Shown in pieces: positions 1,132 to 52,010 of a stretch of DNA of 64,000 nucleotides. Every line of letters begins with the position of its first letter. Position 1 is the first letter of the stretch. The stretch is taken from IMG/VR virus record IMGVR_UViG_3300043446_003193, positions 62,001-126,000 of that record; one strand, written 5' to 3'. Both the position numbers and the translations under genes were made by a program. Below the pieces are notes generated by a model. It made no database searches, was not told the DNA's origin, and saw only the letters and a program-made list of their open reading frames with translations.

Positions 1132-1163
1132 GTAATATAACTAAATTATTTGGATTTACCAAA
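1132..1163 (-). promoter_or_regulatory. Bacteroidota-type promoter TTTG-N20-TATATTAC
   Basis: Read from the sequence; the -7 box ends 4 nt before the ATG at 1127. Confidence 0.65.
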
Positions 1164-1616
1164 TTATATCTTAAGTTTTAATTTAGTTACTTGCTTCTTA
1201 TCTACTGCATATTTTTCACAAACATATTTGATATATTCTCTACCTTCTCTGGTTGAATAAAGAATTTCTATATAATCGTTTGCTTGAACTTCCGAACAAT
1301 CGTATTCCTTTTTAATTAAATCAACTAAAAAAGATTCATACTTATCTTCTGATTTTCCTTTAATATATTTTAAATAATATTTACCTTTTGGTATGACACT
1401 AATATACAACTTATACATTTCCTTTGGTTGTAGTGTTTGCGTTAAAGGAAGTAAAGTTGCAATCAGTTCAACCCATTCAGGTTTCATAGAAAGAAAACGA
1501 TTAATCATAAAATTACTCCATGATTTTAAATCTTCTTCCGTTAGTTTATCAAAGTACTTTGGGTCTTGTTCGGTTGTTACTGCATTAATATGGTCAAATA
1601 ACTTTTTGGCTGCCAT
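1164..1616 (-). CDS. Clamp loader small subunit (T4 gp62-like)
   Basis: LFDHINAVT...WSNFMINRFLSM pattern, size, and position near the gp44-like gene. Confidence 0.65.
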   Translation of the reverse strand: MAAKKLFDHINAVTTEQDPKYFDKLTEEDLKSWSNFMINRFLSMKPEWVELIATLLPLTQTLQPKEMYKLYISVIPKGKYYLKYIKGKSEDKYESFLVDLIKKEYDCSEVQANDYIEILYSTREGREYIKYVCEKYAVDKKQVTKLKLKI

Positions 1617-1858
1617 TATTCAATGATTTTTGTTTCTTGTAATTCTTGTGGTAATAACTCATTTAAAGGTTTACCACAACTCGCACAAAGATATAATTCA
1701 ATTGGCATTACTGAATCTTTTGCTCCACCTGTCAATAGACGTGATATTTTTTTAAATCTATATCCTGGCATAAATACTTTTCCACCACAATCACATTCCA
1801 TGTCTCTTGCATCATTTAAGTTAAAATTAGGTGGTAATTGGTTCATTTGCTCTTGCAT
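1616..1858 (-). CDS. Zn-ribbon hypothetical protein
   Basis: CDCGG...CASCG Cys pairs; TAATG coupling to the next gene. Confidence 0.65.
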   Translation of the reverse strand: MQEQMNQLPPNFNLNDARDMECDCGGKVFMPGYRFKKISRLLTGGAKDSVMPIELYLCASCGKPLNELLPQELQETKIIE

Positions 1859-1864
1859 AATTTT

Positions 1865-2812
1865 TTATTTTATAATGTTTAATATTTGTATAATTGTTGA
1901 AGTGAATACGATTTCTTTATCCACCACTAATGCATCTTTTGATAATCCTTCTGCAATTGTAACTATCACATTTGCTGTATTTCCACTTGCATAATCATCA
2001 ACCTTATCATACAACATTGAATACATTTCTGAATAATCATTTAATTTATTATCCGCAACTGCTTGTCTAATTTTCATAAACACATTTCTCTTATCATCAT
2101 TTGATTTCAAAAGGTCAATCAATTTAGTTTGGAAATTTGATTCAACCATAATCTGATGGTCAACTTTCAATTCACCTTTTGCAGATTGTAATTGACAAGT
2201 ATTAAGTATTCTTCTAATATCTGGATAATAAGAATTGATAATATCCGCCATATTCTTTGGTTCATACTTAATGTTTTCAGCCTCTAAAATTTTAGCTACT
2301 TGAACTGCTACATCCTTTTTTGTAGGTGGAGTAATTGCAAATGATTGACATCTACTTTTGATTGGGTCAATAATCTTTTCGTGATAATTACAAGTTAAGA
2401 TAAAACGGCAATGTTTACTAAATGTTTCCATTAAGTTACGAAGGATTGCCTGTGCTCCAGGTGTCATATAATCAAACTCATCTAAGATAATAATCTTAAA
2501 TCCTGCAAAACCCATTGATGATGCAAAGTTCTTTACTTTGTTACGAACTGTGTCCACATTATTTTCATCTGATGCATTGATAATCATGCTATCACACTTA
2601 ATTGTATTTACTATTAACTTTGCTAATGTGGTCTTACCTGTCCCTGCTTTGCCATACAAAAGTAAATGTGGAATATCGTTATTATCCAAATATTGTTGTA
2701 TTGTTTCTTTTACAGTTTCATTTCCTACATATTCGGAAAGTGTTTGTGGGCGATACTTTTCTACCCATAATGTATGTTCTCTTTTAGAGACATCGTTTGC
2801 GAAAAAACTCAT
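1865..2812 (-). CDS. gp44: Clamp loader large subunit (gp44/RFC-like AAA+ ATPase)
   Basis: WVEKYRP RFC box, GKAGTGKT Walker A, ILDEFD Walker B, SRC motif. Confidence 0.93.
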   Translation of the reverse strand: MSFFANDVSKREHTLWVEKYRPQTLSEYVGNETVKETIQQYLDNNDIPHLLLYGKAGTGKTTLAKLIVNTIKCDSMIINASDENNVDTVRNKVKNFASSMGFAGFKIIILDEFDYMTPGAQAILRNLMETFSKHCRFILTCNYHEKIIDPIKSRCQSFAITPPTKKDVAVQVAKILEAENIKYEPKNMADIINSYYPDIRRILNTCQLQSAKGELKVDHQIMVESNFQTKLIDLLKSNDDKRNVFMKIRQAVADNKLNDYSEMYSMLYDKVDDYASGNTANVIVTIAEGLSKDALVVDKEIVFTSTIIQILNIIK

Positions 2813-2824
2813 ATTATTATTTTT

Positions 2825-3272: not shown

Positions 3273-3303
3273 CTAATATACAAATAATTTTTTAAAATGC
3301 AAA
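3273..3303 (-). promoter_or_regulatory. Bacteroidota-type promoter TTTG-N19-TATATTAG
   Basis: Read from the sequence upstream of dut. Confidence 0.55.
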
Positions 3304-5847
3304 GAATTTCTTTGCAGTTTGTGCACCTTCGGATGCTTTTTCCCATTTAAGAGCGTTATAAAAATCATCTAATTTATTTTCTAATTCCGATTTATATATC
3401 TCATCCCTATCAATGTATGTTTCTATAAATTCCATAACTTCTTTAGGGTCATTATAATCTTTAAATGCTAATCCTTCTAGTCCTAATGGATTTTGTCTTA
3501 GATATACCCATTTTACTTTATCACCATCTCTGATTGGTTCGTGTTTATATGGACAATTGAAGAACTTTAATAATCTATTGTATGCTATTCCGGCTTTAAC
3601 GTGTGCAGGTGTTCCTTTTTCAAATTCTGCAACCGGTTTACCCTTTTCCCATCTTCCATTGTCATACTTACTTAACTCTTTAATTGCACCACCCTTTGCA
3701 ATTGTATTTACAGGAAGTTCTGGTAAACTCTTTTTAAATTTTAATAATGTATCATCAATATATTCATTGTTTTTACCCATTAGAATATCTTTTAACATTG
3801 TAGACATGAACTTCTGAAATGCTTTTGGAAATGAGGAACGAACTACATCCAATCCTTTTACATCCAACTTATCACATGGAATACCATTTTTCAAAATCAT
3901 CCATTGTGCATATCTTTTCTTTGCTACCCAAAATCCGGCTTTACTGATATACTCTTTCTTAATTTCAAATCTATGTTTCTCTTTTGGAATACAGAAAAAT
4001 CTTTCTGCTAATAGGTCATAAAATTTATTAAGGAATGTTTGTGTTTCTTCTGCAATAGTATTTACCTCTTGTGCCATTCTCTTCTCATCAAAGTTCTTAT
4101 AATCAGGGTATCTATGTTTTACCAAAGGTTCTGCCATCATATAGATTGAATCCGTATCAATATACACATTGTAATCTTCTTTCGTACCCAACTCTTTCCA
4201 ATATTTGATGTTAGCCATTTCGGCAGTTTTCTTAATTACTGTTTGACCAGTAATTGTAACCGCTTCCGCATTATCAATATCATAGAAACGAAATGCAGGT
4301 AATCCTAACACACCATACATTGAGTTCAAAAGAATCTTTTGTACCAATTGTCTTTTAGCGTAAAACTCATACTTTTCATTATCACCCGCTTCACCATATT
4401 TCTTTTCTAATTTTCTGAACTCAACCCTTTGTTGAAACCATGTATTAAGAATATCCGCAATCAAACCTGGTTTATCCTGATTATAAAGTACTCCATTTGC
4501 AGCGATACCCAAATTACTATCTTTGATTACATCTGCAAGTTCCTGTTTTGTATATTCATATTCATCACCATCCTTACCGATTATTTTATACATCCTATCT
4601 TCACCTTTAATCCATTGTTCCGGGTCCCAATTTTGTACCTTACCAATCTTTGTTTCTGGACTGATATTTAGGGTCATAATGATTGATGGATATAGAGATG
4701 TTAAATCCAAGTCATAAATCCAATCATACTTTCCAACGATAGGTTCTTTAACATATGCTCCGATGAACTTCTCTTCGTTGTTATCACGAAGTGCCTGCAT
4801 TCTTTCTTTCCTATCTTTTGGTTTATTTGGTGATACTAAATTTTTAGTTTTTAGATATGCCAAACATGCTCCTTCTAAGTACTTTGATGAATAAATGTAA
4901 TCTTCATATGGAACGAATCCGGCGTGACAAATCGCTCTACATAAATCAATGAATTGTAATTTACTATCCATTGCTACAACAAGGTCTACGTCCACAATAT
5001 TATATTCAATGAATTTTTCTAAATCCTCTTCAAATAAGTCATCCAAACTTCCTTCATACTCTACCTTACCTCTACCCAATTCTTTGGTTGCAATGTGGTT
5101 AAGGGTGTATGAACTTTCTAAACCATAGTTATAGTTTTTATAAAGATTGATGTAATCTAAAATTGATACACCACCAAAACTCCATTTCTCTCTATATGGA
5201 GACCAGAAAGTTTGTCCGATTGGAGATAATCTTTTTGCATGACCTTCTCCACATACATTTTTTAAACGATTGTAAAGATATGGAATATCAAAAAAATCTA
5301 TATTCCAACCAGTTAAAATAGTTGGGTTAATTTCCTCGTAATAATTAAGGAAAGCAAGTAAGAGATTTTTCTCGTTGTCGTAAATGTGAATAACAACTTT
5401 TCTCCCATCTTTGCTAAAATTGTTTGCATTATTTTTAACTTTTTTATGTTTATCTAAAACAAATACATCAAAAACACCAGTTGCCCCATCATGAGCAGCA
5501 ATTGCTGTAATTTCATTTTGAGCTTCTCGTGTATTTGGAAGACCTGTAATCATTTCTACCTCAATATCAAATGTCATTACTCTATGTCCATTTGAAGGTA
5601 AATCGGAATCATACATATCAACCAACACTCTCGTTGTTTCTGGTACATCACTTTCAAATAAATCTTCGGATTCTTCTTTTTCCCATTTGCTAATTCTAGT
5701 CAAACGGTCTCCGTTCATTGAAAGATGTTGACCCATAGGGTCTTTTTTGTAGGCATACTTTCGGTATGGTAAGGTGAAGTAACCTTTTTCATCGTCCCAT
5801 AAATGAATTAAGTTTCTTTGCCTTTCGTAGAATATGTTTTGATACAT
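3292..5847 (-). CDS. gp43: Family B DNA polymerase (T4 gp43-like)
   Basis: Exonuclease motifs FDIE and TGWNIDFFD; polymerase motifs DLTSLYPSII, KILLNSMYG, YIDTDS, KKRY. Confidence 0.96.
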   Translation of the reverse strand: MYQNIFYERQRNLIHLWDDEKGYFTLPYRKYAYKKDPMGQHLSMNGDRLTRISKWEKEESEDLFESDVPETTRVLVDMYDSDLPSNGHRVMTFDIEVEMITGLPNTREAQNEITAIAAHDGATGVFDVFVLDKHKKVKNNANNFSKDGRKVVIHIYDNEKNLLLAFLNYYEEINPTILTGWNIDFFDIPYLYNRLKNVCGEGHAKRLSPIGQTFWSPYREKWSFGGVSILDYINLYKNYNYGLESSYTLNHIATKELGRGKVEYEGSLDDLFEEDLEKFIEYNIVDVDLVVAMDSKLQFIDLCRAICHAGFVPYEDYIYSSKYLEGACLAYLKTKNLVSPNKPKDRKERMQALRDNNEEKFIGAYVKEPIVGKYDWIYDLDLTSLYPSIIMTLNISPETKIGKVQNWDPEQWIKGEDRMYKIIGKDGDEYEYTKQELADVIKDSNLGIAANGVLYNQDKPGLIADILNTWFQQRVEFRKLEKKYGEAGDNEKYEFYAKRQLVQKILLNSMYGVLGLPAFRFYDIDNAEAVTITGQTVIKKTAEMANIKYWKELGTKEDYNVYIDTDSIYMMAEPLVKHRYPDYKNFDEKRMAQEVNTIAEETQTFLNKFYDLLAERFFCIPKEKHRFEIKKEYISKAGFWVAKKRYAQWMILKNGIPCDKLDVKGLDVVRSSFPKAFQKFMSTMLKDILMGKNNEYIDDTLLKFKKSLPELPVNTIAKGGAIKELSKYDNGRWEKGKPVAEFEKGTPAHVKAGIAYNRLLKFFNCPYKHEPIRDGDKVKWVYLRQNPLGLEGLAFKDYNDPKEVMEFIETYIDRDEIYKSELENKLDDFYNALKWEKASEGAQTAKKFFAF

Positions 5848-8174: not shown

Positions 8175-8206
8175 TAAATATAACACTTTTTTTTGATAAT
8201 ACCAAA
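8175..8206 (-). promoter_or_regulatory. Bacteroidota-type promoter TTTG-N20-TATATTTA
   Basis: Read from the sequence upstream of the clamp gene. Confidence 0.65.
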
Positions 8207-9948: not shown

Positions 9949-11398
9949 ATTCAAAAAATTTATTTAAGTTTAATTTGTCTTTATATGAATATAAGGAATT
10001 TAATTGAGATTTCAAAATATCTTTTCTGGCTTCCATCATATCGCCTGTTCTTGCACCTTTTGCAAAAAATACTTTTGGTCTAAAAAGAAGTTCATCTGAT
10101 ATTTCACCTTTAAATGCGGCTCTCAATAGTGGTTTCATATGACCGTTTTCCTTTTGATATAGTGGTGGAATGTTTAATGTATATTCCACAAATGGTCTCC
10201 AACTATATGGTGTACGAACTTCTACCGTCCCACCCCACATAATAGATTGGTTTGTTGTTAAGAAATTGGTTTTATGTACATCCTCTACTAACTTTCTCCT
10301 AGCCTTATCATAATCTTCAGGTTTGTAATGAAACGCTTGAATGTGTCCATAACTACCCCATATCTCATCGGATAGGTCACCACTAAATACTACTTTAAAT
10401 CCCAACTCATTTATCTTTTTACCCAATGCTATTTGAGCAATTGCAGAACCAACATTTTGCCATCTACTTTGTTCTATCACATAAAGTGTTTCATCTATTG
10501 CATCTAATACATCCTGTTCGCTTAATATAATTTCATGTAACTTAACACCAAATTCTTTTGCAGCTATTCTGGCATATTTTATATCATCATTCTTTGTATC
10601 ACCATCTCCCATTGATACTACAAATGCTTCAATATCAGGTTTAATTTTAGAAAGTAAATAGGTTGTAATTACTGAATCAATTCCACCACTAAGGATTGTA
10701 CAAATAGGAACATCTGATACCATTTTAACCCTTACAGCTTCTTCCATCATTGTTCTAATATTCTTAACAATAGTTTCTCTATCATCATTTATTATTTCAT
10801 TTGGAAGTTTATAATAAGTTTGTGTTGAATGTTCTAATGTATTATAATCATATTCTAAATAAGTACCTGGATAAACGGCCTTTACTTGCTTCTCATATAA
10901 TTCTGAAATTGGTAATCCTTTCTTTTCCGAACAAAATACTAATTTACCGTCATTATCAATTGCATACCATAAAGGTAATTCACCAACATAATCTCTAACA
11001 ACAAATATTTTATTAAGTTTTGTATCAACTATTGCAAATGAAAACATACCATCTAATAATTCAAATGATTTTGTTCCAAATTCACAATAAGCGTTTAGGA
11101 TGATTTCAGTATCAGATTTTGTTTTGAACTTTGTTTTTAAACCTTTTTTTAATTCTTTTGTTTCTATACTATCCCAAAGTTCACCATTGTAAACAATACA
11201 TACGGTCTTATCTTCATTCCACATTGGTTGATTTGCAGATGAAGATAAGTCCTGTATTGAAAGACGATTGTGTCCAACATAAACGTTGTCCACTTTATCT
11301 ACTTTAGAAGCATCTCTGCCTCTATGAATTATTTTATTTAATTGGGTATAGGTTTGTTCCTCAGAGGTAAACCAATTACCGCCTATTATTCCACACAT
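9941..11398 (-). CDS. asnB: Asparagine synthetase B-like amidotransferase (Ntn glutaminase plus PP-loop synthetase)
   Basis: MCGI N-terminal Cys, HNRLSI, NQPM, YNGE, SDTE, SGGIDS PP-loop; SGDLSDEIWGSY in place of the usual SGEGxDExFGGY. Confidence 0.88.
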   Translation of the reverse strand: MCGIIGGNWFTSEEQTYTQLNKIIHRGRDASKVDKVDNVYVGHNRLSIQDLSSSANQPMWNEDKTVCIVYNGELWDSIETKELKKGLKTKFKTKSDTEIILNAYCEFGTKSFELLDGMFSFAIVDTKLNKIFVVRDYVGELPLWYAIDNDGKLVFCSEKKGLPISELYEKQVKAVYPGTYLEYDYNTLEHSTQTYYKLPNEIINDDRETIVKNIRTMMEEAVRVKMVSDVPICTILSGGIDSVITTYLLSKIKPDIEAFVVSMGDGDTKNDDIKYARIAAKEFGVKLHEIILSEQDVLDAIDETLYVIEQSRWQNVGSAIAQIALGKKINELGFKVVFSGDLSDEIWGSYGHIQAFHYKPEDYDKARRKLVEDVHKTNFLTTNQSIMWGGTVEVRTPYSWRPFVEYTLNIPPLYQKENGHMKPLLRAAFKGEISDELLFRPKVFFAKGARTGDMMEARKDILKSQLNSLYSYKDKLNLNKFFEYA

Positions 11399-11402: not shown

Positions 11403-11434
11403 CTAATTTACGAAAAATAATTGATATTACCAAC
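11403..11434 (-). promoter_or_regulatory. Bacteroidota-type promoter GTTG-N20-TAAATTAG
   Basis: Read from the sequence; same spacer ending (TTTTTCG) as two other copies; 4 nt from the asnB-like ATG. Confidence 0.55.
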
Positions 11435-36982: not shown

Positions 36983-37024
36983 ATTAAAAGTTCAAAACAT
37001 TTATTTATGTAATGAACTTTTAAT
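36983..37024. repeat. Perfect 12 bp inverted repeat upstream of the sheath gene
   Basis: ATTAAAAGTTCA-N18-TGAACTTTTAAT. Confidence 0.75.
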
Positions 37025-37054
37025 CTAAAAGGGAATTATATGTGGTGTAAACTA

Positions 37055-37513: not shown

Positions 37514-37590
37514 AATTCAATTTTAGTTTTGTTTTGTTTGTATATAAATATATATTGTAATTTTTTTTGAAAAATGTACTTTATTATTTA

Positions 37591-39942: not shown

Positions 39943-39954
39943 TTTTGTTTTTTA

Positions 39955-42276: not shown

Positions 42277-42291
42277 TTTTTATAAATATTT

Positions 42292-45200
42292 TTATTGTGC
42301 TATCTCCATTATTGTCCAAGTAAAATTTCCAACAGTAGCTGCATCAAATCCTGCAGATGCGTAATACGGATTCCACTCATAATAAGCTCCACTACTTCCG
42401 GTTGTTCCAATTCTAAATATAATTGTTTTTGTTGTTGTTCCCCAAGAATTAGCCGTACCATTTAATGAAATAATACCACCATTTTGTCCATTAGGACCAA
42501 AATTATATAAATATTGACCAGATTTAACCAAAATTGTACCATCAGTATGATTTGCAGCCCATAAATAAAAATGATCAGATACATTTGATCTTTCCCACAT
42601 AACAACACTATTTGTCATTATTAATATTTTTGATGTTGCTGATTTTGGTGTAAATGTTGTTTGTGCTATGTTTAATCCCTGATTATATGCCGGTGTACTA
42701 CCCCCTGCTTCATTTGTTCCCATGCTTGAACCAGTACCTTGTGCTCCGGATGAAACTGTTGCGTTTCCTGTTACAACTTGAATTGGTGTTCCAGGTGCGA
42801 ATATATTACAAGTAAAATTAGCAAAACCACTTTTATCAATAGTAACTACTTTACCGGCTCCAGTATACATTGCAATATACGCACAACTACAATTGGTATA
42901 TGGTACTTGGAATTCATTAATATTATGATTATATGCAATTGCACCCACATTTGTATTATTTCTAGCAAAATTTATTGAACTATATGAACACCCTGCTGCT
43001 ACATCTATTTTAACCTGATTATCATTTAATCCCAAAATATGAAGAGTACTTCCAGGAGTTGTTGTACCAATTCCCACTCTTCCACCACTAGAACCATTTA
43101 AAATCAAACAAGATGCTTCAATTGCTAATTTTTTATATTCATTATCACCATAATTATCTATATAAGAAGCGTTACCCGCTGATTGAAAATATAATCTAGA
43201 GTTACCCACATCATTTGTACCACCTAATCTTATTGAAGCCGTGCAAGATGAACCAGTATTTAATATTTGTAAATCACACATACATACTCTACCATAAAAT
43301 TTAGCAATACCATCATTAAATACCCTAAATAAAGCAGCAGTATCTTCATAATTATTTAATCCCCAAGCTCCACCATTTGCAGTGGTTCCTGCATTATGAA
43401 AAACAATTTGATTATTACCTGCATAAAATAGTCTTGAAAAAGTACTATTGTTAGATTTTACAAATACAGTATCTCTATTACAACCATCTATATAAAGTTG
43501 ACAAGATAGTGTAACTGCTCCAGTATTTGCAATTGATATTCTATTATTATTTGCGGTTTGTAATGCTAATGCTGCCTGGCTATTTATTAATATATTTCCG
43601 GTAGAATTTGATGCTTCCATTCCACCTAATTGAGTAATTCCATTATAAAAATAAACACCAGAATAGCCAGTTGTGCAGCCATTATTTATTGAAATTGCGG
43701 GATATTGTCCTGCTCCAGTACATGCATTGTTATTACATATTTCCAATTGGAATCTAGGAGTACATGTACCCATACCCACTTTACCACTACTACTAATAAA
43801 TAAATCAGGAGTAACACCAGCATCTTGTGTACTAAATTGTAAATTTCTACCAATACCCGATGATGTTGTTGTTGACTTAAATCTATTATAATTTGGTAAC
43901 GAACCATCAAAGAAAAAACTACCACTATCATCCATTACTTGGAATTTTCCAGCTGGTGAATTTGTATTAATACCTACACTTCCACTCATTTCCCAAATAC
44001 AACTATCATATAAATGGTCACCACCTCCAGACTTTGCTACATAATTACAGGTGAGTGTTGTTTCCGTACCAAAAGTTGCTGCTCTTGGTCCGCTCATCAA
44101 CACACCACCACTATAACCAACACCTGAAGGATTAGAATATATCCAACGATTACAAGTACTATCCCATAATAAACTTCCGGTTACACCATTTGCACTTCCG
44201 CTATCTTGTACACTTATACCTGCATATCTAACGGAAGGGTTTGCAGTGTTTAGGTTTACTATGTTTGTTCCAATACTTACTGAACTTGCTGAAATATATT
44301 GAATAGATGAAGAACCTTGTACTATAAAATCTCCAGCTATCCAAGTTGTACCAGATATGATTTGTGTGCCATAGAATGTGTTACTTCCAGTACTTGCTAA
44401 ACTTCCTGTTTTATTTTCTAAAGAATTTAGTCTTGAAGTTGCCGAAGAAGTAAATGTATTAGTAGCCGAATTACTTGCTGTAAATGAATTAAGTGATGAA
44501 AGTATTCCTATTACTTGAGCAGAAGATGAAACTGTGCCTACCGGTAAAGAATTAACTAAATTGATACTTCCACTATTAAGAGTGTCCGTTGTAACTATAC
44601 TTTGTGCAGTAATTGTATTTGTAACTTGTCCTTGTGGGTTTACTAAATAAATTGAACCACTTCCAACATATATGTGTCGGAACGGTTTATCAGTAGTACC
44701 TAAATCATATGCACCACTTACTGCAGGGATAATACTTCCACCAGCAATTATAGATGAACCACTTATAGAAATTACACTACTACCACTAATTCCACTTTGA
44801 GAACTAAAATATGCAAATTGTCCGGCTTCTCCACCACCACCAATACCACTAAACGCACCAATTTGGTTATTATATACAAAAATATCTATCACTTCTCCAC
44901 CAGTCGCAGCTTCTGTTAATATAATTGATGTTCCGTTATTTGCAGTATATTCTTCACTCGCCAAATGAGAACCATTGAAATATACATCAATAAGTCCAGG
45001 TGTATAATCTACTAAAAATGTAGTTTGTGATGCCGATGCTGTAAATGATGTTTTTGTTCTTAATGCGTTTTGTTCAACACCACTAACTGGTCTAAATGTT
45101 ACCAATTCAACAATATCTCCCGTTTGGTTTGAACCAGTTGTTAGAGTTATTGTACTTCCATTGATATCACTAAATTCAGTTGAATCTAATTTTGTACCAT

Positions 45201-45594
45201 TATAATAAACTTGTACTAAACCAGTTAAATATCCGTATGATGAATTGAATACAGTTTGTCCGGCAGTTGCAACAAATCTTTCAGTATTTAAGATTGCATT
45301 ACTTCCACTTATTGCTATTAGTTGTCCACCACTTATCGCAGCAACATAATTTACACCACTCCCACTTAAGTCCGAAACAAATAATGAACCAGTGATTGTA
45401 GTTGTTGTATTAATATTAAATCCACCGGTGCTTGAAATTGATGCTGTATATGAACCTGTACCGATTTGAGATGGGTTCAATCCTTCAATTCTACTAACAA
45501 TTGATGCACTTAATGCGGACAATTCTGATGCTGATATTACATTTTCTCCGTTAATTGAAAGTGAACCAGTGACTCTTAGGTTATGTTGTCTCAT
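42292..45594 (-). CDS. Large tail fibre-like protein
   Basis: Two TAGQTVF/SASQTTF...NG repeats, shared module, GIGTTTP repeats. Confidence 0.7.
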   Translation of the reverse strand: MRQHNLRVTGSLSINGENVISASELSALSASIVSRIEGLNPSQIGTGSYTASISSTGGFNINTTTTITGSLFVSDLSGSGVNYVAAISGGQLIAISGSNAILNTERFVATAGQTVFNSSYGYLTGLVQVYYNGTKLDSTEFSDINGSTITLTTGSNQTGDIVELVTFRPVSGVEQNALRTKTSFTASASQTTFLVDYTPGLIDVYFNGSHLASEEYTANNGTSIILTEAATGGEVIDIFVYNNQIGAFSGIGGGGEAGQFAYFSSQSGISGSSVISISGSSIIAGGSIIPAVSGAYDLGTTDKPFRHIYVGSGSIYLVNPQGQVTNTITAQSIVTTDTLNSGSINLVNSLPVGTVSSSAQVIGILSSLNSFTASNSATNTFTSSATSRLNSLENKTGSLASTGSNTFYGTQIISGTTWIAGDFIVQGSSSIQYISASSVSIGTNIVNLNTANPSVRYAGISVQDSGSANGVTGSLLWDSTCNRWIYSNPSGVGYSGGVLMSGPRAATFGTETTLTCNYVAKSGGGDHLYDSCIWEMSGSVGINTNSPAGKFQVMDDSGSFFFDGSLPNYNRFKSTTTSSGIGRNLQFSTQDAGVTPDLFISSSGKVGMGTCTPRFQLEICNNNACTGAGQYPAISINNGCTTGYSGVYFYNGITQLGGMEASNSTGNILINSQAALALQTANNNRISIANTGAVTLSCQLYIDGCNRDTVFVKSNNSTFSRLFYAGNNQIVFHNAGTTANGGAWGLNNYEDTAALFRVFNDGIAKFYGRVCMCDLQILNTGSSCTASIRLGGTNDVGNSRLYFQSAGNASYIDNYGDNEYKKLAIEASCLILNGSSGGRVGIGTTTPGSTLHILGLNDNQVKIDVAAGCSYSSINFARNNTNVGAIAYNHNINEFQVPYTNCSCAYIAMYTGAGKVVTIDKSGFANFTCNIFAPGTPIQVVTGNATVSSGAQGTGSSMGTNEAGGSTPAYNQGLNIAQTTFTPKSATSKILIMTNSVVMWERSNVSDHFYLWAANHTDGTILVKSGQYLYNFGPNGQNGGIISLNGTANSWGTTTKTIIFRIGTTGSSGAYYEWNPYYASAGFDAATVGNFTWTIMEIAQ

Positions 45595-45655
45595 TCGTAG
45601 TTATTCTCTGTTTAATTAATACTACATATAAGTATTTAATTTCTTCCGAATTGAG

Positions 45656-45817
45656 TTAAGGAATATAAATGTGTGCAGTATCTTCGTTTATATTACTAAA
45701 ATGTATTGGTGAAGATATTTTTACACCATTACTTAAATTTAATATTAGGTATGTCAAAGTAATTGCTGCTAAAATTTTAATCAATTCTAAACTACTTTTG
45801 AATTCTATTGTTTTCAT
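45656..45817 (-). CDS. Small hydrophobic hypothetical protein (53 aa)
   Basis: ATG 11 nt after the upstream stop; one hydrophobic stretch (LIKILAAITLTYLILNL). Confidence 0.4.
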   Translation of the reverse strand: MKTIEFKSSLELIKILAAITLTYLILNLSNGVKISSPIHFSNINEDTAHIYIP

Positions 45818-45827
45818 ATTATTATTT

Positions 45828-46679
45828 TTAATATCCAAATCTTGCTTTTGTTACATTATAATTATTTAATATCTCTGCATCGGATAATGCTCTATTATAT
45901 ATAAAATATGTAGCAATTGCACCATTATTAAATTCACCAGGAGTGTTATCTGCTTTAGTGTGTGCACCAATTAAATATGTTTTATTTGGTTTGTTTTGTA
46001 CTCCCGATTTAGATGTACTTGTATATAGTGAACCATTTATGTACATTTTTTGTGTAGTTCCATCAAATGTTTGTGCCAAATTATACCACGTATTATATGA
46101 ATATGTAGAATGTAAATCACTATTTGATGTACCACCACCTGTTGTAATTCTTGTACTCATATATCCAATTGCAAGTCCGTTTAGATAAATTTCAACACCT
46201 TGATATACTGAACTTTCATATCCAGTACCACCTAATATCATTACTTTTTCAGAATATGTATTATTATTAAACCAAATTTGAGTTGTGGAATAATCCGTTG
46301 CAGGTGAAGAAGATAAACTCATATATCCTCCACCTAAATAAGATGCAGCAGGTGCGTATGTTCCAGTAAATTGATAATATCTAATATTACCGGAAGTTTG
46401 AATTACAGGATTTGATCCACCATTATATGAATTTGGTAATGCATAATATCCAGTATTTAATAAATTATACCAAGCACTATTATTTGCATATGTTGCATTT
46501 TTTGCATCCAAATACCAAGTCATTCCACTAGTTACTACACCGGTACCATAAAATTCACTCATTCCATCAGGTGTTGATTTTCCCATCGTATTACTTAAAG
46601 ACCTCAACGAATATGAAGGACTCCCTAATTCCGAAGCTATTTGACCGATTGATATACATCCGCTACTTTGTAATGCCAT
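45828..46679 (-). CDS. Concanavalin A/LamG-like lectin-domain virion protein
   Basis: LDAKN...WYNLAQTFDG...MYING...YNRALSDAEILNNY LamG pattern. Confidence 0.8.
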   Translation of the reverse strand: MALQSSGCISIGQIASELGSPSYSLRSLSNTMGKSTPDGMSEFYGTGVVTSGMTWYLDAKNATYANNSAWYNLLNTGYYALPNSYNGGSNPVIQTSGNIRYYQFTGTYAPAASYLGGGYMSLSSSPATDYSTTQIWFNNNTYSEKVMILGGTGYESSVYQGVEIYLNGLAIGYMSTRITTGGGTSNSDLHSTYSYNTWYNLAQTFDGTTQKMYINGSLYTSTSKSGVQNKPNKTYLIGAHTKADNTPGEFNNGAIATYFIYNRALSDAEILNNYNVTKARFGY

Positions 46680-49033
46680 TATAATCCTTTTGGTTTTTTA
46701 AGATTTTCTACTTCTATTGTAAGATTATCTATTTTAATTTGTTGTTCTTTAATTGCTTCTACCAATAATGCCGTCATATTTCCATAAGATACTCCATATC
46801 TATCTTGTTCTTTGTTATATGTTACTACTTCTGGAACTACATTTTGAACTTCTTGTGCTATGAAACCAATCTTAGTTGATTTATCTTCCAAATCAGTTCT
46901 ATTATACGAAACACCTCTCAATCTTAATACTTTATCTAATGGGTCGGTTATTGTTACTATATTTTCTTTAATTCTTCTATCGGAATATGCTACAACATCT
47001 CCAGATGCAGTTGCTGTACCACCACTACTTACACTAAATAATACTACCGTCCAAGCGTAGTCCACAACTTCAAAACTTCTAGAAGATGAACTATTACCAC
47101 CCAGTTGAACAGTCATTGTACCTTGGTTTCTATCGGATGCCCTACCTATCCACGCTTCACCTGTATTTGTTGTGCTATTTGGAAAAGTTCCCAAAGTAAT
47201 TTTTCCAGAGAATGATGAATATCCAGCACTTGTAATATTAAAAAATGCCGTATCATCTCTTCCAATTGAGTATTTATCCGTACCTTGTGCATTTGCACCT
47301 ACACCCATATCCCAATAATGATTTGCTGCACCATCCGATGCCATTCTTACTTTTGCTCCCGTATTTGTACCAGTAAATCCATTAACACCATTTGCAACAT
47401 AAGAAATGTGTGGATTTATATGCATTACCCATCTATCTTGATGACTACCATAAAGTGTTGGATATGTCGTACTACCTGCCCAACTGGCTTGAATATTTCC
47501 CAATGTTGCGGTATATGACCCACCATTTATTGCAGTTACTGCTCCAGTTGAAGTTACTGATCCAAATGTTGGACCAGAAGTTGTTAGTAATGCCTGATTG
47601 ATATATGTTCCAAATCCAGATGTAGATGATAATGTAATTTGCCCACTACCACTAACTACCGTTTCTGCATTCAATTTTGTTTTTACTCTTGCATCGGTAT
47701 AATATAAGTTGGTGTTTTCTGATAAATTTGCAGTAGTAAATCCACTTAAAGATATTTGAGATGAACCTGAAACAATTCCAGCAGGTATTGAACTTAATGA
47801 TGAATAAATAACTTGCCCACTACCACTTACAACACCGGAAGGTAATTGAGCACTTCCACTCCATACACCTGCCAAATTTGTTGCAGTTATAGTTGATGAT
47901 ACTTTTAAACTACCAGTTATTTCAGTATTTAATTTTAATCCAATAGTTGTACCATCATCATAAATTGCAGATGAAGAAATATGATCATCACCAACTGCTT
48001 TGACAATATAATTGTTAACTAATCCTAATTCGCTACCTAAAGTTTGTGATTGTGGTCCTGCTATAAATTTTGCAGATGTATATCCACTTCCACTTGGATT
48101 TTGATACAACCAGTTATTATTGGTTGAATCCCAAAGTATTGAACCAGTAAGACCGGTACTACCACTATCTATTACACTTATACCCGCATAACGAACTGCA
48201 GGATTTGCAGTATTTAGAACTACTTTATTTGTTCCAATATTAACCGAACTACCTGTAATATTTTGAATTGATGAACTTCCTTGTACAATTAAATCGGTAG
48301 TAATATATAATGAACCACTAAATACTTGAGTACCAATAAATGTGTTTGAACCCGTTGTTGCTAGCGAACCAGTTTTATTTTCTAAGTTTGTAAGACGAGT
48401 ATTTTGAGTTGTATTTAAATTATCTACCGATGCAGATGTGGTTTCTAATGCACTTAATCTTGCATTTTGAGTAGTATTTGTAGTGTCTACTGATGCCGAT
48501 TTTGTTTCTAATGCATTTATTCTAGCTGTATTTGATGATGTTATAGTTTCAATACTACCTAATCTTGCAGAAGTAGATGAAGTAAATGTATTTATTGCTC
48601 CTACCGAAACATTTACACTTGCTGATGTTGTTTGTAAAGAAGATAATACTGTATTTGTAGAAGATGTATAAGAATTAAATGATGCTGATGTTGCGTAATC
48701 ACTTACTTGTCCTACCGAAGATGATTGTGCAATATTTTGTGTTACTGATCCGGTACTGTCTACAAATGCAATAGAAGATGTGGTAATTACAACACTACCA
48801 ATTTGAATACCACCACCTGGAGCAGAACTTATTGTTGATTTTACACTACCACTATCTACAAAATTAATTGAACCGGTAGATACATAAATTTCTTTAAAGT
48901 ATTTATCAACACTTCCTAAATTACGAATGTTATTAGTATCTGGAATAATGTTACCACTTACTATTATATTTTGAAAAGAAGAACTGGCATTTACCGTTAG
49001 TGATCCGGTTATTTGAGCATCATTTATTAACAT
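46679..49033 (-). CDS. Tail fibre with C-terminal intramolecular chaperone (peptidase S74-like)
   Basis: YSDRRIKENI...GFIAQEV...LLVEAIKEQQ; shared module; no Cys seen. Confidence 0.85.
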   Translation of the reverse strand: MLINDAQITGSLTVNASSSFQNIIVSGNIIPDTNNIRNLGSVDKYFKEIYVSTGSINFVDSGSVKSTISSAPGGGIQIGSVVITTSSIAFVDSTGSVTQNIAQSSSVGQVSDYATSASFNSYTSSTNTVLSSLQTTSASVNVSVGAINTFTSSTSARLGSIETITSSNTARINALETKSASVDTTNTTQNARLSALETTSASVDNLNTTQNTRLTNLENKTGSLATTGSNTFIGTQVFSGSLYITTDLIVQGSSSIQNITGSSVNIGTNKVVLNTANPAVRYAGISVIDSGSTGLTGSILWDSTNNNWLYQNPSGSGYTSAKFIAGPQSQTLGSELGLVNNYIVKAVGDDHISSSAIYDDGTTIGLKLNTEITGSLKVSSTITATNLAGVWSGSAQLPSGVVSGSGQVIYSSLSSIPAGIVSGSSQISLSGFTTANLSENTNLYYTDARVKTKLNAETVVSGSGQITLSSTSGFGTYINQALLTTSGPTFGSVTSTGAVTAINGGSYTATLGNIQASWAGSTTYPTLYGSHQDRWVMHINPHISYVANGVNGFTGTNTGAKVRMASDGAANHYWDMGVGANAQGTDKYSIGRDDTAFFNITSAGYSSFSGKITLGTFPNSTTNTGEAWIGRASDRNQGTMTVQLGGNSSSSRSFEVVDYAWTVVLFSVSSGGTATASGDVVAYSDRRIKENIVTITDPLDKVLRLRGVSYNRTDLEDKSTKIGFIAQEVQNVVPEVVTYNKEQDRYGVSYGNMTALLVEAIKEQQIKIDNLTIEVENLKKPKGL

Positions 49034-49077
49034 CTATATTCTGTTTTTGAATATAAATATCAATTTTTACTATTAAA

Positions 49078-49830
49078 TTACTTCTTATTGTACTGGCTAA
49101 GTATCTGTCTTGCCGAACTTTCATCCATATACGGATAAAGTCTATGATATCCCAATGTACCTAATTCAAATTTTGATTCAACACTAAATTTCTTAGATAC
49201 TTCAATTGGTGCATAATTTCCGATATTATACTTAATTAATCTTAAACAAAAGAATATATCTTCTGCAAAAAATGATGCTGTTGAATATTGTCCCAATTGT
49301 ATTAGTTCTTGTAAATCTGTTTCCCATCCAAAGTTTCTGCACACATATTCCATTATTCTAGGATTTCTAATTGATAATCCACCATTTTGAATTGTTTTAT
49401 CACCAACCCAATTATAACAAGGTGCACCAATATAATCCCAATCTAAGAATTCTTCAATACCTTCTCTTAAAAGACCAGTATCGGTTTGGAATATTAAAAT
49501 TCTTTCGTATTCGTATAAATCAATCCAAAAGTTTCTATCAGTTAAGAATAGACAATAATTTAACAATGGTTTTAAATGAGGATTGTTTTTTAATAATTCA
49601 TCAAATCCTGCAATATTTTGTATTGTTTTTGGAATTGGTAAATTAGACGGATATCTTCGGAAATGAATATTATCTTCTTTTAATAACTTTCTATATTCCT
49701 TTTCAGTGCTTTCTGATGTGTAAATGATTATATCAGTATCTTTTGGTAAATACTTCATATGTTCTTTTACAATCTTATAAAATTCTGCAATCTTTCTATC
49801 TTCAATTATAACTGCTCCTAATTTTTTCAT
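49078..49830 (-). CDS. Glycosyltransferase-like protein (DUF5672-like)
   Basis: ILIFQTD...WDYIGAP...NGGLSIRN...EDIFF; start moved to ATG 49830. Confidence 0.75.
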   Translation of the reverse strand: MKKLGAVIIEDRKIAEFYKIVKEHMKYLPKDTDIIIYTSESTEKEYRKLLKEDNIHFRRYPSNLPIPKTIQNIAGFDELLKNNPHLKPLLNYCLFLTDRNFWIDLYEYERILIFQTDTGLLREGIEEFLDWDYIGAPCYNWVGDKTIQNGGLSIRNPRIMEYVCRNFGWETDLQELIQLGQYSTASFFAEDIFFCLRLIKYNIGNYAPIEVSKKFSVESKFELGTLGYHRLYPYMDESSARQILSQYNKK

Positions 49831-49832
49831 AA

Positions 49833-50540
49833 CTATATTTCGTTTTCCCAATTTGTTAAAGGTGATAACCATTTAGTTTCCCCATGTGTAGAATAGCCAG
49901 GAATAGATGATACCAATCTTCTACCTTTTTTAGTTAGGTCTCCCCACATTTGAAAATCATGTGGATATTCTCCTGCTGTCCATTGTCTTAAAACCGCTTC
50001 ATCTTCTTTTAGAGTTTTTACTTTTGCAGCAAATGTCATTGTAGTTGAATTAGTAATCTTAAAATGTGATAACTCACCACAATAAACTCTCGTAAATTCT
50101 GCTCTACCCTCACAATAAGGATTTCCACCTTCAATTGGATTTAAGTATTTATCTCTATGGTCATAAAGTGTAACATAATCCATTCCTAAATTCAAACCAT
50201 CTTCTAATACTTTTTGGGAACCGTCTTTATGTAAATAATCATCTTCTAAAAAGTAAACAATTTCATCTCCCTCTAAAACAAATACTTCCGTTTGTCCTAA
50301 TGCATGTGATAGTGCTAAATTAAATGTTCCAGCTCCATGTCCTATTTGAACTATTTGTGCTTTACCACTATAAATCTTTTCTATTTCTGATTTAAGATTT
50401 TCCGAAACACCATCCATTATAAGTAAAAAATCTTCTTGTCCGAAATGTTTAAGTGCATTTTTAAGACAATTGATTTTAGTAATATAATCGGGCTTCTCTT
50501 TTTGATATCCACCTTCTGATATTCTATAAATAACTTTCAT
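49833..50540 (-). CDS. GT-A fold (GT2-like) glycosyltransferase
   Basis: YFLEDDYLH DxD-type motif, LYDH, STHG. Confidence 0.7.
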   Translation of the reverse strand: MKVIYRISEGGYQKEKPDYITKINCLKNALKHFGQEDFLLIMDGVSENLKSEIEKIYSGKAQIVQIGHGAGTFNLALSHALGQTEVFVLEGDEIVYFLEDDYLHKDGSQKVLEDGLNLGMDYVTLYDHRDKYLNPIEGGNPYCEGRAEFTRVYCGELSHFKITNSTTMTFAAKVKTLKEDEAVLRQWTAGEYPHDFQMWGDLTKKGRRLVSSIPGYSTHGETKWLSPLTNWENEI

Positions 50541-51052
50541 TAACCTCTTTTTATAACTCTAAAACCATTATTGTTTGTTACAGTTTCACATTCTACCCAA
50601 TGAGGATTTGCTTCCATAAATTCTTCAATTGCTCTATTCATATCATTTGCCCATTCGGTATCATGAAATGCAATATATTTTCTGGCTTTATTTCCATGCA
50701 ATTCTAATTCACCCTTCATTTGGTCGTAGTTGTGTTCGGTATCTATAAACAATAAATCGGTTTCTTCTATTTGAATTTCTAATGTGCTTTTTTCTATGAA
50801 CTGAAAATCTATTCCTAATTGGTTTGTTGTATCGTAAACATCATTAATATTTTCCGATGTTCTAATATCATAACAAATTAATTTTTTAGGATTTGAACCA
50901 ACCCAACCCCAAGTTGAAACAACATCTCTAACTCCAAATTCAGTTATATGTTCACATTCTTTCCCATATTTTAACATAAGGGGAAAGTGTTCACAAATAT
51001 CACAACCGGAATTACTTAGTTCTTCTATTTTTTCAGTTACATTAATTATCAT
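50540..51052 (-). CDS. Small-molecule/glycan SAM methyltransferase (Methyltransf_24-like)
   Basis: EFGVR, DLLFIDTEH, IAFHDT. Confidence 0.75.
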   Translation of the reverse strand: MIINVTEKIEELSNSGCDICEHFPLMLKYGKECEHITEFGVRDVVSTWGWVGSNPKKLICYDIRTSENINDVYDTTNQLGIDFQFIEKSTLEIQIEETDLLFIDTEHNYDQMKGELELHGNKARKYIAFHDTEWANDMNRAIEEFMEANPHWVECETVTNNNGFRVIKRG

Positions 51053-51951
51053 TAGAACTTATTTACTTCATTGATTATTTGTGATACATCAAACATTTCG
51101 TCTTGAGAACCATAAGGACACTCGTGAAATTGTCCGTCTAATGAATAATCAAAATAAAGTGAATCAATTCTCTTTGTATTTCCAATTGGTTCTTTTGCTT
51201 CAATATTTTTGTGTATTTCGTAACCAAACATTTTAGGATGTGTTCCAATCCATAAAACTACTGATGGTAATTTGAATGCCGCTGCTGCGTGTTGTAAACA
51301 AGAATCAATTAGGACTCTTTTTGCTGAAACTTTTAATAGAGAGAACAATTCGGTATTACTCATCTGACGAGTAATTGTTTCTACTGCCGGATGATTTACT
51401 GATTGAGATTCGTGCTTACAAATTTGAATGATATGATATTGTTGTCCAAATTGTTGAACCAATGCTTCTACAACTGTTTTCGGCATGTCTCTTGTCCATG
51501 CATAGATTGGTTGTCCATCCATAATTGGGCCTCCGTTTGTATGCAATAACATAATCGGACGAGAACGCTGCCATTGTAAGTGCATTTGATTTTGTGTCAT
51601 ATTCAAATACAATTCTGGCAAATCTTCTTTCTTATTAAAAGGTAAATCATACATCTTATGCCAAGTTTCCGTTAGAGGAGTTTGTTGCATCATATGTTGT
51701 GATTCAAAATAAGGTTCTCTTCTTAAGACAATAGTATCTTTGCCATTGATATAATCATCCCAAAAATAAGGAGATACACCTAATCTATAAACTCTATGTA
51801 TGTAAGGATTGTTTAAAAATATCTCTGGGAAAGAACATACTACGATTAACTTTCTATCTGGATATTTTTTGTAAATATTTTTAAGGATTGCAGTAGATGC
51901 TACATTTTTACCTAGTCCACCTTCAACGTGGAAAATAACGAATTTGTCCAT
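51052..51951 (-). CDS. GT-B fold (GT9-like) glycosyltransferase
   Basis: GGLGKNV N-terminus; LIDSCLQHAAAAF..PSVVLW pattern of the heptosyltransferase family. Confidence 0.7.
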   Translation of the reverse strand: MDKFVIFHVEGGLGKNVASTAILKNIYKKYPDRKLIVVCSFPEIFLNNPYIHRVYRLGVSPYFWDDYINGKDTIVLRREPYFESQHMMQQTPLTETWHKMYDLPFNKKEDLPELYLNMTQNQMHLQWQRSRPIMLLHTNGGPIMDGQPIYAWTRDMPKTVVEALVQQFGQQYHIIQICKHESQSVNHPAVETITRQMSNTELFSLLKVSAKRVLIDSCLQHAAAAFKLPSVVLWIGTHPKMFGYEIHKNIEAKEPIGNTKRIDSLYFDYSLDGQFHECPYGSQDEMFDVSQIINEVNKF

Positions 51952-51978
51952 TTATAACTTTTTAATGTTTTATAGAAA

Positions 51979-52010
51979 TAAATATACGAAAAATAATTTA
52001 GAATACCAAA
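51979..52010 (-). promoter_or_regulatory. Bacteroidota-type promoter TTTG-N20-TATATTTA
   Basis: The only clear copy found inside the structural region; directly upstream of the glycosyltransferase cassette. Confidence 0.65.

What the first reader, a model, noticed from the sequence alone, without database searches (positions are those of the whole stretch)
1132..52010. Eight host-sigma promoters match the Bacteroidota -33/-7 consensus, predicting the host phylum
Seen: TTTG (once GTTG)-N19/20-TAnnTT(T/A/G) at 1132, 3273, 8175, 11403, 20210, 21549, 25383 and 51979. The spacer often ends in TTTTTCG. Starts are preceded by A-rich tracts rather than Shine-Dalgarno sites. Established: Bacteroides/Flavobacterium primary sigma recognises TTTG-N19-21-TAnnTTTG and these hosts largely lack SD use. 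Inference: a Bacteroidota-infecting large myovirus.
Basis: partly seen in the sequence, partly recalled or inferred. Interest (0 to 1): 0.6.

Follow-up and report, generated by a model that had tools for sequence, protein, structure and literature searches.

The report
Bacteroidota-type early promoters in jumbo phage
The eight flagged sites are real and belong to a 30-base promoter motif found 31 times in a 209-kb myovirus; it has the layout of Bacteroidota promoters, and independent evidence agrees that the host is a Bacteroidota bacterium, so this is a well-supported but fairly ordinary case of a phage copying its host's promoter.

Summary
All eight sites exist at the stated coordinates, on the minus (coding) strand. 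The loose pattern is barely above chance. The sites do, however, share a 30-nt motif, tTTGG-N19-TAtaTT ("P1"). P1 occurs 31 times on the coding strand of the 209,443-bp phage and never on the other strand. Nine copies lie in the window (one was missed, at 9988).

In 46 related viral contigs P1 occurs 252 times sense and once antisense. The two unscored bases after it are T (82%) and G (64%), giving the canonical Bacteroidota TAnnTTTG.

P1 precedes replication and nucleotide-metabolism genes, a tmRNA, tRNAs and a GOLLD RNA. A second motif, ATATTTATA ("P2"), precedes tail and head genes.

Independent host evidence agrees with Bacteroidota:
- No Shine-Dalgarno signal, and A-rich -13..-11 and -3 positions, as in a cultured Flavobacterium phage relative.
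- A phage bS21 gene whose nearest cellular relatives are 55/63 Bacteroidota.
- The same -33/-7 geometry as Bacteroidota rpsU promoters.

Caveats:
- In this genome the final TG of the -7 box is weak.
- The motif also reads as a 17-bp-spaced sigma-70 promoter.
- The closest cultured relative is recorded on Microcystis.
- No transcription-start data were available.

About a fifth of P1 sites sit exactly 6 nt before ATG, which predicts leaderless mRNAs.

The parts
1134..1163 (-). P1 promoter (TTTGG-N19-TATATT). The ATG of an exonuclease gene (261-1127) starts 6 nt after TATATT, so a leaderless mRNA is predicted.
3275..3303 (-). P1 promoter (N19 variant). It overlaps the 3' end of the DNA polymerase B gene and lies 15 nt upstream of the dUTPase gene (2825-3259).
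8177..8206 (-). P1 promoter, 30 nt upstream of ORF 7427-8146 (function unknown).
9988..10016 (-).
11405..11434 (-). P1 promoter (GTTG variant, TAAATT box). The ATG of an asparagine-synthase-type amidotransferase (9941-11398, N-terminus MCGIIGG) starts 6 nt after the box. This spacing is conserved in most relatives.
20212..20241 (-). P1 promoter, 100 nt upstream of a gp32-like ssDNA-binding protein gene (19263-20111).
21551..21580 (-). P1 promoter. The ATG of ORF 21230-21544 starts 6 nt after the box, so a leaderless mRNA is predicted.
25385..25413 (-). P1 promoter (N19 variant). An ATG lies 8 nt downstream and opens a divergent PolA-like gene (24108-25376), which heads a replication module syntenic with Flavobacterium phage immuto.
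51981..52010 (-). P1 promoter inside the structural region, 29 nt upstream of ORF 51052-51951 (function unknown).
36973..36980 (-). P2 motif ATATTTAT, with no -33 element, 36 nt upstream of the tail sheath gene (34696-36936). It is a putative late promoter.
34676..34683 (-). P2 motif, 27 nt upstream of the gp19-type tail tube gene (34160-34648).
24094..63905 (-). The other in-window P2 motifs, each 8 nt long. Their low coordinates are 24094, 33004, 37544, 42282, 49053, 55893, 59115 and 63898. They lie 5-34 nt upstream of starts, mostly of tail, baseplate or fibre-region genes.
3292..5847 (-). DNA polymerase family B, part of the replication half of the window where P1 sites are concentrated.
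34696..36936 (-). Tail sheath gene, which shows the phage is a myovirus.

Best explanation
The eight sites are nine of 31 copies of one promoter class (P1). I propose that it is read early or in mid-infection by the host RNA polymerase carrying a Bacteroidota-type primary sigma factor.

The sigma factor would contact TTTG at -36..-33 and TAnnTT(t/a)(g/a) at -12..-5. Transcription would start about 7 nt after the second T of TAnnTT.

What P1 drives. In the window it precedes replication and nucleotide-metabolism genes: exonuclease, dUTPase, an amidotransferase, SSB and a divergent PolA. Elsewhere in the genome it precedes a tmRNA, a tRNA array and a GOLLD RNA.

The conserved A/T-rich spacer and the (C)G at -14/-13 probably make these unusually strong promoters, as in T4 early promoters.

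About one P1 site in five is placed so that the predicted start is the A of the ATG, which would give leaderless mRNAs.

Structural genes use a different motif with no -33 element, ATATTTATA (P2). It is presumably a late promoter that needs a phage factor not yet identified.

Shown: motif, strand bias, position, conservation, gene classes and host-type signals. Inferred: the sigma identity, the transcription start sites and the timing.
For: Motif and significance:
- 31 sense against 0 antisense sites at >18 bits in 209 kb.
- 252 sense against 1 antisense at >14 bits in 842 kb of 46 relatives. In those relatives the two unscored bases after TAtaTT are T (102/125) and G (80/125), giving TAnnTTTG.
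- Most sites are intergenic.

Geometry:
- T-12, A-11, T-8 and T-7 are present in 31/31 sites, and TTTG lies 20 nt upstream.
- In 47 of 54 Bacteroidota rpsU loci aligned on TAHHTTTG, an unselected T-35 (43/47), T-34 (42/47) and G at -33 or -32 appear. This is the same register as P1.
- Literature: the sigma-A box TAnnTTTG spans -12..-5 and the start follows 4-5 nt later (PMC9723704, PMC6847099).

Gene classes:
- P1 precedes an exonuclease, dUTPase, SSB and amidotransferase, and also a tmRNA, tRNAs and GOLLD.
- P2 precedes the sheath, tube and fibre genes.
- P1 and P2 split between genome halves 24/7 against 9/26, Fisher p = 6e-5.

No phage sigma was detected.

The same architecture, TTG-N18-[CT]GTAwATT, occurs in the cultured Flavobacterium phage immuto: 11 on the main strand, 0 on the other, 0.1 expected.

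Host evidence:
- There is no SD signal, and the A-rich -13..-11 and -3 profile is the same as in immuto. It matches F. johnsoniae determinants (PMC6847099).
- The nearest cellular relatives of the phage bS21 are Bacteroidota in 55 of 63 loci.
- 50 of 210 proteins are shared with immuto, and the replication module is syntenic.

Leaderless class:
- Spacing to the ATG peaks sharply at 6 nt: 16 of 134 distinct sites in relatives, at four different genes, with none at 10-14 nt.
- The amidotransferase start is fixed by its Cys2 (MCGIIGG; GATase_6/7 plus Asn_synthase).
Against: - No transcription-start, expression or host-linkage data could be obtained.
- In this genome T-6 is T in only about half of the sites and G-5 is G in about a third (site list). 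In F. johnsoniae these positions are nearly invariant (PMC6847099).
- The motif also fits TTGGTA-N17-TATATT, a sigma-70 layout. The generic sigma-70 scan does flag sites 8177 and 9988.
- The closest cultured relative by protein identity, Mel-JY01, is recorded on Microcystis and carries 24 canonical copies of the motif.
- The strong conservation of the spacer, including a partial TTTG-N7-CAAA dyad, could mean that an additional DNA-binding factor is involved.
- The bS21 scan was seeded with peptide patterns from the phage protein, so the tally is biased towards sequences that share those words.
Confidence: 0.75

Rival explanations
1. P1 is an ordinary sigma-70-type promoter (-35 TTGGTA, 17-bp spacer, -10 TATATT), and the host lies outside Bacteroidota. 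It could for example be a cyanobacterium, as recorded for the closest cultured relative, Mel-JY01.
For: - The spacing TTG-N20-TA is identical in both promoter systems.
- TATATT matches TATAAT at 5 of 6 positions.
- The sigma-70 scan flags two P1 sites.
- Mel-JY01 (host field: Microcystis elabens) shares 62 of 210 proteins at about 41% identity and has the same promoter family.
Against: - Position 5 of the box is T in 31/31 sites, whereas sigma-70 prefers A. The 'ACA' of the -35 is absent, and G follows TTG almost invariably.
- In relatives the box extends to TTTG.
- Sigma-70-type matches in general are not enriched: 77 against 106 expected.
- Translation signals are of the Bacteroidota type, with no SD. 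Mel-JY01 differs here: it has SD-like sites upstream of 29% of starts against 5% in controls.
- The bS21 is of the Bacteroidota type.
- GC is 32%.
Confidence: 0.1
2. P1 is a phage-controlled (middle-type) promoter. The host polymerase would need a phage-encoded activator or sigma-remodelling protein that binds the conserved TTTGG...CAAA region, as MotA/AsiA do at T4 middle promoters.
For: - The 30-nt conservation goes well beyond what sigma contacts would need.
- G-32 is nearly invariant, and a partial dyad TTTG-N7-CAAA occurs in about 14 of 31 sites.
- T-6/G-5 are sub-optimal in this genome.
- The genes served are replication genes, which are middle-class in T4.
Against: - TTTG sits exactly where host promoters have it.
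- Host rpsU promoters also contain TTTGG(T/A)A examples (L019 and L049).
- The CAAA element is absent from the immuto and Mel-JY01 versions.
- No activator has been identified.
- P1 also drives stable RNAs, which are typically expressed from strong constitutive promoters.
Confidence: 0.13
3. The repeats are not promoters. They would be some other dispersed element, such as an operator, a recombination or packaging-related site, or a mobile mini-element.
For: Sequence conservation is high, and four tandem copies lie near the tRNA region.
Against: - The sites have a fixed orientation with the genes.
- They lie directly upstream of starts or of stable-RNA 5' ends.
- The information is bipartite, concentrated at -33 and -7, with a fixed 20-nt gap.
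- The box-to-ATG spacing is precise.
- No target-site duplications or flanking repeats were seen.
Confidence: 0.02

Closest known systems
Bacteroidota primary-sigma (sigma-ABfr / sigma-A) promoters, -33 TTTG / -7 TAnnTTTG (Bacteroides fragilis, B. thetaiotaomicron, Flavobacterium johnsoniae, F. psychrophilum)
   Same: - TA at -12/-11 and TT at -8/-7 are invariant.
- TTTG lies 19-20 nt upstream.
- The spacer is A/T-rich.
- Downstream 5' regions are short, A-rich and SD-free.
- Bacteroidota rpsU promoters examined here show the same register (PMC7366714, PMC6847099, PMC9723704).
   Different: - In this genome T-6 and G-5 are weakly conserved; they are stronger across the clade.
- The -33 element is far stronger than in host promoters and is extended to TTTGG.
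- (C)G at -14/-13 and a CAAA in the spacer are conserved.
- Recognition by the host sigma has not been tested.
Phage T4 early promoters (sigma-70 dependent, conserved well beyond the hexamers) and T4 late promoters (TATAAATA, gp55)
   Same: - There are two promoter classes split between replication/early genes and structural/late genes.
- The early class looks like an over-specified host promoter.
- The late class is a single A/T-only box with no upstream element.
(The T4 comparison rests on established knowledge.)
   Different: - The sequences differ, because the host sigma type differs.
- No gp55, gp33, MotA or AsiA homologue was detected.
- The late box here is ATATTTATA.
Promoter-like motif of Flavobacterium phage vB_FspM_immuto (cultured on Flavobacterium sp. 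LMO8) and of 'Microcystis phage' Mel-JY01
   Same: - All share TTG-N20-(C)GTATATT upstream of genes, plus the ATATTTAT motif.
- The structural and replication modules are shared.
- Sites 5-6 nt before an ATG occur in both phages.
   Different: - immuto lacks TTTGG/CAAA and the terminal TG.
- Mel-JY01 has TTGCA and the full TATATTTG, and it uses SD-like sites.
RpoD promoters of Chlorobaculum tepidum (TTG-N17-23-TA[ATC][ATC][AT]T)
   Same: A Bacteroidota-like layout with a relaxed end to the -7 box (bioRxiv 10.1101/172254).
   Different: It belongs to a different phylum of the same superphylum. This shows that the motif cannot by itself exclude sister phyla such as Chlorobiota or Ignavibacteriota.

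Membership tests
Bacteroidota sigma-A -33/-7 promoter | First six positions of the -7 box, TAnnTT (T-12, A-11, T-8, T-7) | tested here: met
   31/31 sites in the genome and 125/125 distinct sites in relatives.
Bacteroidota sigma-A -33/-7 promoter | T-6 and G-5 of TAnnTTTG, which are nearly invariant in F. johnsoniae (PMC6847099) | tested here: inconclusive
   In this genome T-6 is T in about 15/31 sites and G-5 is G in about 10/31 (one search list). In relatives the figures are T 102/125 and G 80/125 (A 43/125) at positions that were not scored. The cultured Flavobacterium phage immuto also lacks the TG.
Bacteroidota sigma-A -33/-7 promoter | No G at -10/-9 (TAHHTTTG) | tested here: met
   29 of 31 sites comply. 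The two exceptions are TATGTT and TAAGTT.
Bacteroidota sigma-A -33/-7 promoter | TTTG near -33, 19-21 nt upstream of TA | tested here: met
   TTTG(G) lies 20 nt (sometimes 19 nt) upstream. Bacteroidota rpsU promoters show the same register.
Bacteroidota sigma-A -33/-7 promoter | Transcription starts 4-5 nt after the box and is initiated by the host sigma-A holoenzyme | not testable with these tools
The only indirect support is the sharp ATG peak 6 nt after TAnnTT.
Sigma-70 -35/-10 promoter | TTGACA and TATAAT hexamers with a 17 +/- 1 bp spacer | tested here: inconclusive
   The spacer is 17 bp and TATATT matches at 5 of 6 positions. However, the -35 reads TTGGTA with a near-invariant G at position 4, and T at -10 position 5 is invariant. 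Generic sigma-70 matches are not enriched.
T4-type late promoter system (considered for motif P2) | A single A/T box with no -35 element, upstream of late genes | tested here: met
   ATATTTATA has no upstream conserved element. 35 sites lie within 60 nt of a start, and 26 of those are in the structural half of the genome.
T4-type late promoter system (considered for motif P2) | A gp55-family late sigma factor is encoded | tested here: not met
   T4 gp55 protein, phrog_234 and phrog_12791 found nothing in the genome. A very divergent factor cannot be excluded.
Leaderless mRNA | The transcript 5' end is at, or within a few nt of, the A of the start codon | not testable with these tools
   This is predicted from spacing only. 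Six of 31 P1 sites have the ATG 6-8 nt after TAnnTT. The spacing is conserved in relatives at four genes.

The most novel reading that the evidence does not exclude
P1 may be a conserved 'dual-register' strong-promoter cassette. It would satisfy both the Bacteroidota -33/-7 layout and the sigma-70 -35/N17/-10 layout. That could explain why the same promoter family persists in relatives recorded on hosts from two phyla (Flavobacterium and Microcystis).

In addition, a dedicated subclass of P1 is spaced exactly 6 nt from the ATG to produce perfectly leaderless mRNAs. This mode is rare in Bacteroidota (about 4-6% of mRNAs) and might be linked to the phage's own bS21, which lacks the Tyr54 that helps sequester the anti-SD.
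Probability: 0.1. Interest if true: 0.7.

Novelty: new member of a known kind. Interest (0 to 1): 0.38.

Why it matters
The result gives a sequence-only host call at phylum level for an uncultured 209-kb freshwater-type jumbo myovirus, and shows how far such a call can be trusted. The promoter motif is suggestive but ambiguous on its own. It becomes convincing only when combined with translation-initiation signals, the phage bS21 and kinship to a cultured Flavobacterium phage.

The result also supplies a ready-made set of strong, compact promoters, with a candidate late-promoter box, for Flavobacteriia genetics. It flags a testable class of leaderless phage mRNAs in a phylum that lacks Shine-Dalgarno recognition.

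Tried and rejected
- Megablast of 12 kb against the phage collection found no match.
- The phage tmRNA DNA was searched against three Bacteroidota, one Ignavibacteria and one 'Chromatiales' genome. Nothing matched, so the tmRNA gives no host signal.
- A phage sigma factor was sought with Pfam Sigma70_r2, the T4 gp55 protein, phrog_234 and phrog_12791. All were blank. The factor for P2 therefore remains unidentified.
- The canonical TTG-N19-21-TAnnTTTG pattern is not enriched in immuto. That phage uses the TG-less version instead.
- The NCBI protein named 'Flavobacteriaceae bacterium' S21 (88% identical) is not host evidence. Its 5.1-kb contig carries a T4-type prohead protease, so it is a phage fragment binned into a MAG.
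- No paper on Mel-JY01 is in the library. One broad paper search returned nothing relevant.
- One DNA search used the wrong spacer length and is not relied on.

Full report
**Context.** The window is bases 62,001-126,000 of a single 209,443-bp IMG/VR virus record that is estimated to be complete. GC content is 32% and nearly all genes are on the minus strand. The window encodes the following:
- a family-B DNA polymerase and a class-II ribonucleotide reductase;
- a DnaB-type helicase, a 5'-3' exonuclease and a gp32-like SSB;
- a dUTPase and an asparagine-synthase-type amidotransferase;
- a tail sheath, a gp19-type tail tube and tail fibres.

It is therefore a distantly T4-like jumbo myovirus.

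**The observation.** As a loose pattern they are close to chance: 38 matches against 26.5 expected. They are, however, copies of a much longer motif, aTTTGGTAATtTcAAAtATTTTTCGTATATT. A matrix built from it finds 31 sites on the coding strand of the genome and none on the other strand at >18 bits. Nearly all lie in the 5.6% of the genome that is intergenic. I call this class P1.

**Conservation.** 46 IMG/VR contigs encode a 73-96% identical amidotransferase. In their 842 kb, P1 scores >14 bits 252 times in sense and once in antisense. The two bases after TAtaTT were not part of the scoring matrix. In 125 distinct sites they are T (102) and G (80) or A (43). The clade consensus is therefore tTTGG-N19-TAtaTTTG, which is the canonical Bacteroidota -7 box. 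In this particular genome those two positions are weaker: about half T and about a third G.

**Comparison with real Bacteroidota promoters.**
- The literature places TAnnTTTG at -12..-5, with the start 4-5 nt later. T-12, A-11, T-8, T-7, T-6 and G-5 are nearly invariant, G is avoided at -10/-9, and TTTG lies near -33 (PMC6847099, PMC9723704, PMC7366714).
- In P1, T-12, A-11, T-8 and T-7 are present in 31/31 sites. G occurs at -9 only twice. TTTG occupies -36..-33.
- As a control, I aligned the upstream regions of rpsU in 54 Bacteroidota genomes on the nearest TAHHTTTG. 47 had such a box. The unselected columns showed T-35 (43/47), T-34 (42/47) and G at -33 or -32, which is the same register as P1. 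Some even read TTTGG(T/A)A.

**Ambiguity of the motif.** TTG-N20-TA is also the geometry of TTGACA-N17-TATAAT. P1 can be read as TTGGTA-N17-TATATT, and a generic sigma-70 scan flags two P1 sites. That scan is not enriched overall: 77 matches against 106 expected. Three features favour the Bacteroidota reading:
- T is invariant at the fifth box position.
- The 'ACA' of a -35 hexamer is absent.
- The box extends to TG across the clade.

Chlorobaculum has a similar relaxed box (bioRxiv 10.1101/172254). The motif alone therefore does not fix the phylum.

**What the promoters serve.** In the window, P1 precedes an exonuclease, dUTPase, an acetyltransferase-like ORF, the amidotransferase, SSB, a small ORF, a divergent PolA-like gene and one unknown gene in the tail region. 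Elsewhere it lies 42 nt before a tmRNA, inside a 19-tRNA array, and in four tandem copies just upstream of a GOLLD RNA.

**A second motif.** ATATTTATA (P2) has no upstream element. It occurs 39 times in sense and 3 times in antisense in intergenic DNA. In most sites it sits 12-36 nt before a start codon (range 4-57 nt), including those of the sheath, tube and fibre genes, often just after terminator-like hairpins.

**P1 and P2 occupy different halves of the genome.** Below 88 kb (the replication/tRNA half) against above it, the counts are 24/7 for P1 and 9/26 for P2, Fisher p = 6e-5. This resembles the T4 early/late division. No Sigma70_r2 domain or gp55-type factor was found.

**Leaderless subclass.** With the box at -12..-7, the start falls 7 nt after TAnnTT. 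Six of the 31 P1 sites have an ATG 6-8 nt after the box, five of them at exactly 6 nt. One is the amidotransferase. Its start is fixed by the catalytic Cys2 (MCGIIGG; GATase_6/7 plus Asn_synthase), and its 6-nt spacing is kept in most relatives. Across relatives the box-to-ATG distance peaks at 6 nt: 16 of 134 distinct sites, at four different genes. No site falls at 10-14 nt. Leaderless mRNAs make up only about 4-6% in Bacteroides and Flavobacterium (PMC7366714, PMC9723704). This is a prediction from spacing, not a measurement.

**Independent host evidence.**
1. Translation signals. SD-like 4-mers occur upstream of 8% of starts against 9% of coding-region controls. A reaches 63-73% at -13..-11 and 60% at -3. 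The cultured Flavobacterium phage immuto has the same profile. These are the positive determinants described for F. johnsoniae and called characteristic of the phylum (PMC6847099).
2. The phage encodes bS21. A scan of one genome per species found 63 relatives. 55 of them, including all of the best-scoring ones, are Bacteroidota; the rest are Ignavibacteriota or MAGs labelled 'Chromatiales'. The phage protein shares the FTKPSIKKR motif. The scan was seeded with phage peptide words, so the tally is biased. bS21-encoding freshwater myoviruses have been assigned to Bacteroidetes before (PMC9723584), although those genomes differ in size and in the orientation of the gene.
3. Kinship. 50 of 210 proteins match immuto, including a syntenic module of divergent PolA, SSB, RecA and DnaB (PMC11348598). 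immuto carries the same TTG-N20-(C)GTATATT motif, also without the terminal TG.

**Evidence against.**
- The closest cultured relative by identity, Mel-JY01 (46-49% for polymerase and sheath; 62 of 210 proteins), is recorded on Microcystis elabens. It has 24 canonical TTG-N20-TAnnTTTG copies against 3.2 expected.
- Unlike this phage and immuto, Mel-JY01 shows a clear SD-like signal: 29% against 5%, with a G peak at -11..-8. Either the promoter family works in more than one phylum or that host record needs checking. In both cases the motif by itself is not decisive.
- No start-site data could be obtained.
- The tmRNA gave no host signal.

**Verdict.** I put the mechanism at about 0.75 and the host phylum at about 0.8-0.85. 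This is a new member of a known kind, in which a phage's early promoters mimic the host consensus. The moderately interesting extras are the leaderless spacing class, the unassigned late box and the cross-phylum question raised by Mel-JY01.

Noticed in passing
G000 19053-19467 (minus strand; outside the window, locus L128): A full-length match to GOLLD RNA (RF02032, 267 bits against a 150-bit threshold). It lies next to the tRNA array, just downstream of four tandem P1 promoters at G000 19959, 20062, 20202 and 20313. The RNA probably starts near 19952.
   Followed up: partly
G000 13965-20832 (outside the window): 19 tRNA genes and a tmRNA (RF00023, 79.6 bits; the tag ends ...GADYAVAA). A P1 promoter lies 42 nt upstream of the tmRNA (box ends at 20881) and another lies inside the tRNA array (17087). 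The tmRNA has no BLAST-level similarity to five test genomes.
   Followed up: partly
G000 152522-152677 (locus L010 1486-1665, minus strand): The phage-encoded ribosomal protein bS21 (59 aa) has the Bacteroidota-type FTKPSIKKR motif. It has Arg at the position where Bacteroidota bS21 has Tyr54, the residue that stacks on the 16S 3' tail. Proteins 80-93% identical occur on many metagenome contigs of up to 240 kb.
   Followed up: partly
window 24094-63905 and genome-wide: A second upstream motif, ATATTTATA (P2), has no -33 element and precedes structural genes. It is shared with immuto and Mel-JY01. No gp55-like factor was found that could read it.
   Followed up: partly
PP395634.1 (loci L002-L009): 'Microcystis phage' Mel-JY01 combines 24 canonical Bacteroidota-style TTG-N20-TAnnTTTG sites and an S21 gene with a clear Shine-Dalgarno-like signal, which this phage and immuto lack. 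Its host record and its signals therefore point in different directions.
   Followed up: partly
P1 sites, e.g. window 1134-1163 and 20212-20241: The -33 TTTG(G) and a spacer (C)CAAA form a short dyad, TTTGG-N5-CCAAA. Some form of it occurs in about 14 of 31 sites. It is absent from the immuto and Mel-JY01 versions and remains unexplained; it could be an operator.
   Followed up: no
locus L137 (GCA_009923175.1 contig RFUC01000128.1): A 5.1-kb contig in a MAG labelled Flavobacteriaceae carries an 88%-identical S21 next to a T4-type prohead protease (Peptidase_S77). It is a fragment of a related phage binned with a bacterium, not a bacterial rpsU gene.
   Followed up: yes
window 24108-25376 (minus strand): A 422-aa protein with only weak PolA similarity heads a module syntenic with the 'divPolA1' replication module of the immuto group (PMC11348598). 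The phage also has a regular PolB at 3292-5847.
   Followed up: partly
window 5856-7427, 8207-9436, 13874-14929 (minus strand): Three ORFs have weak, sub-threshold N6/N4 DNA-methylase similarity and lie among the replication genes.
   Followed up: no
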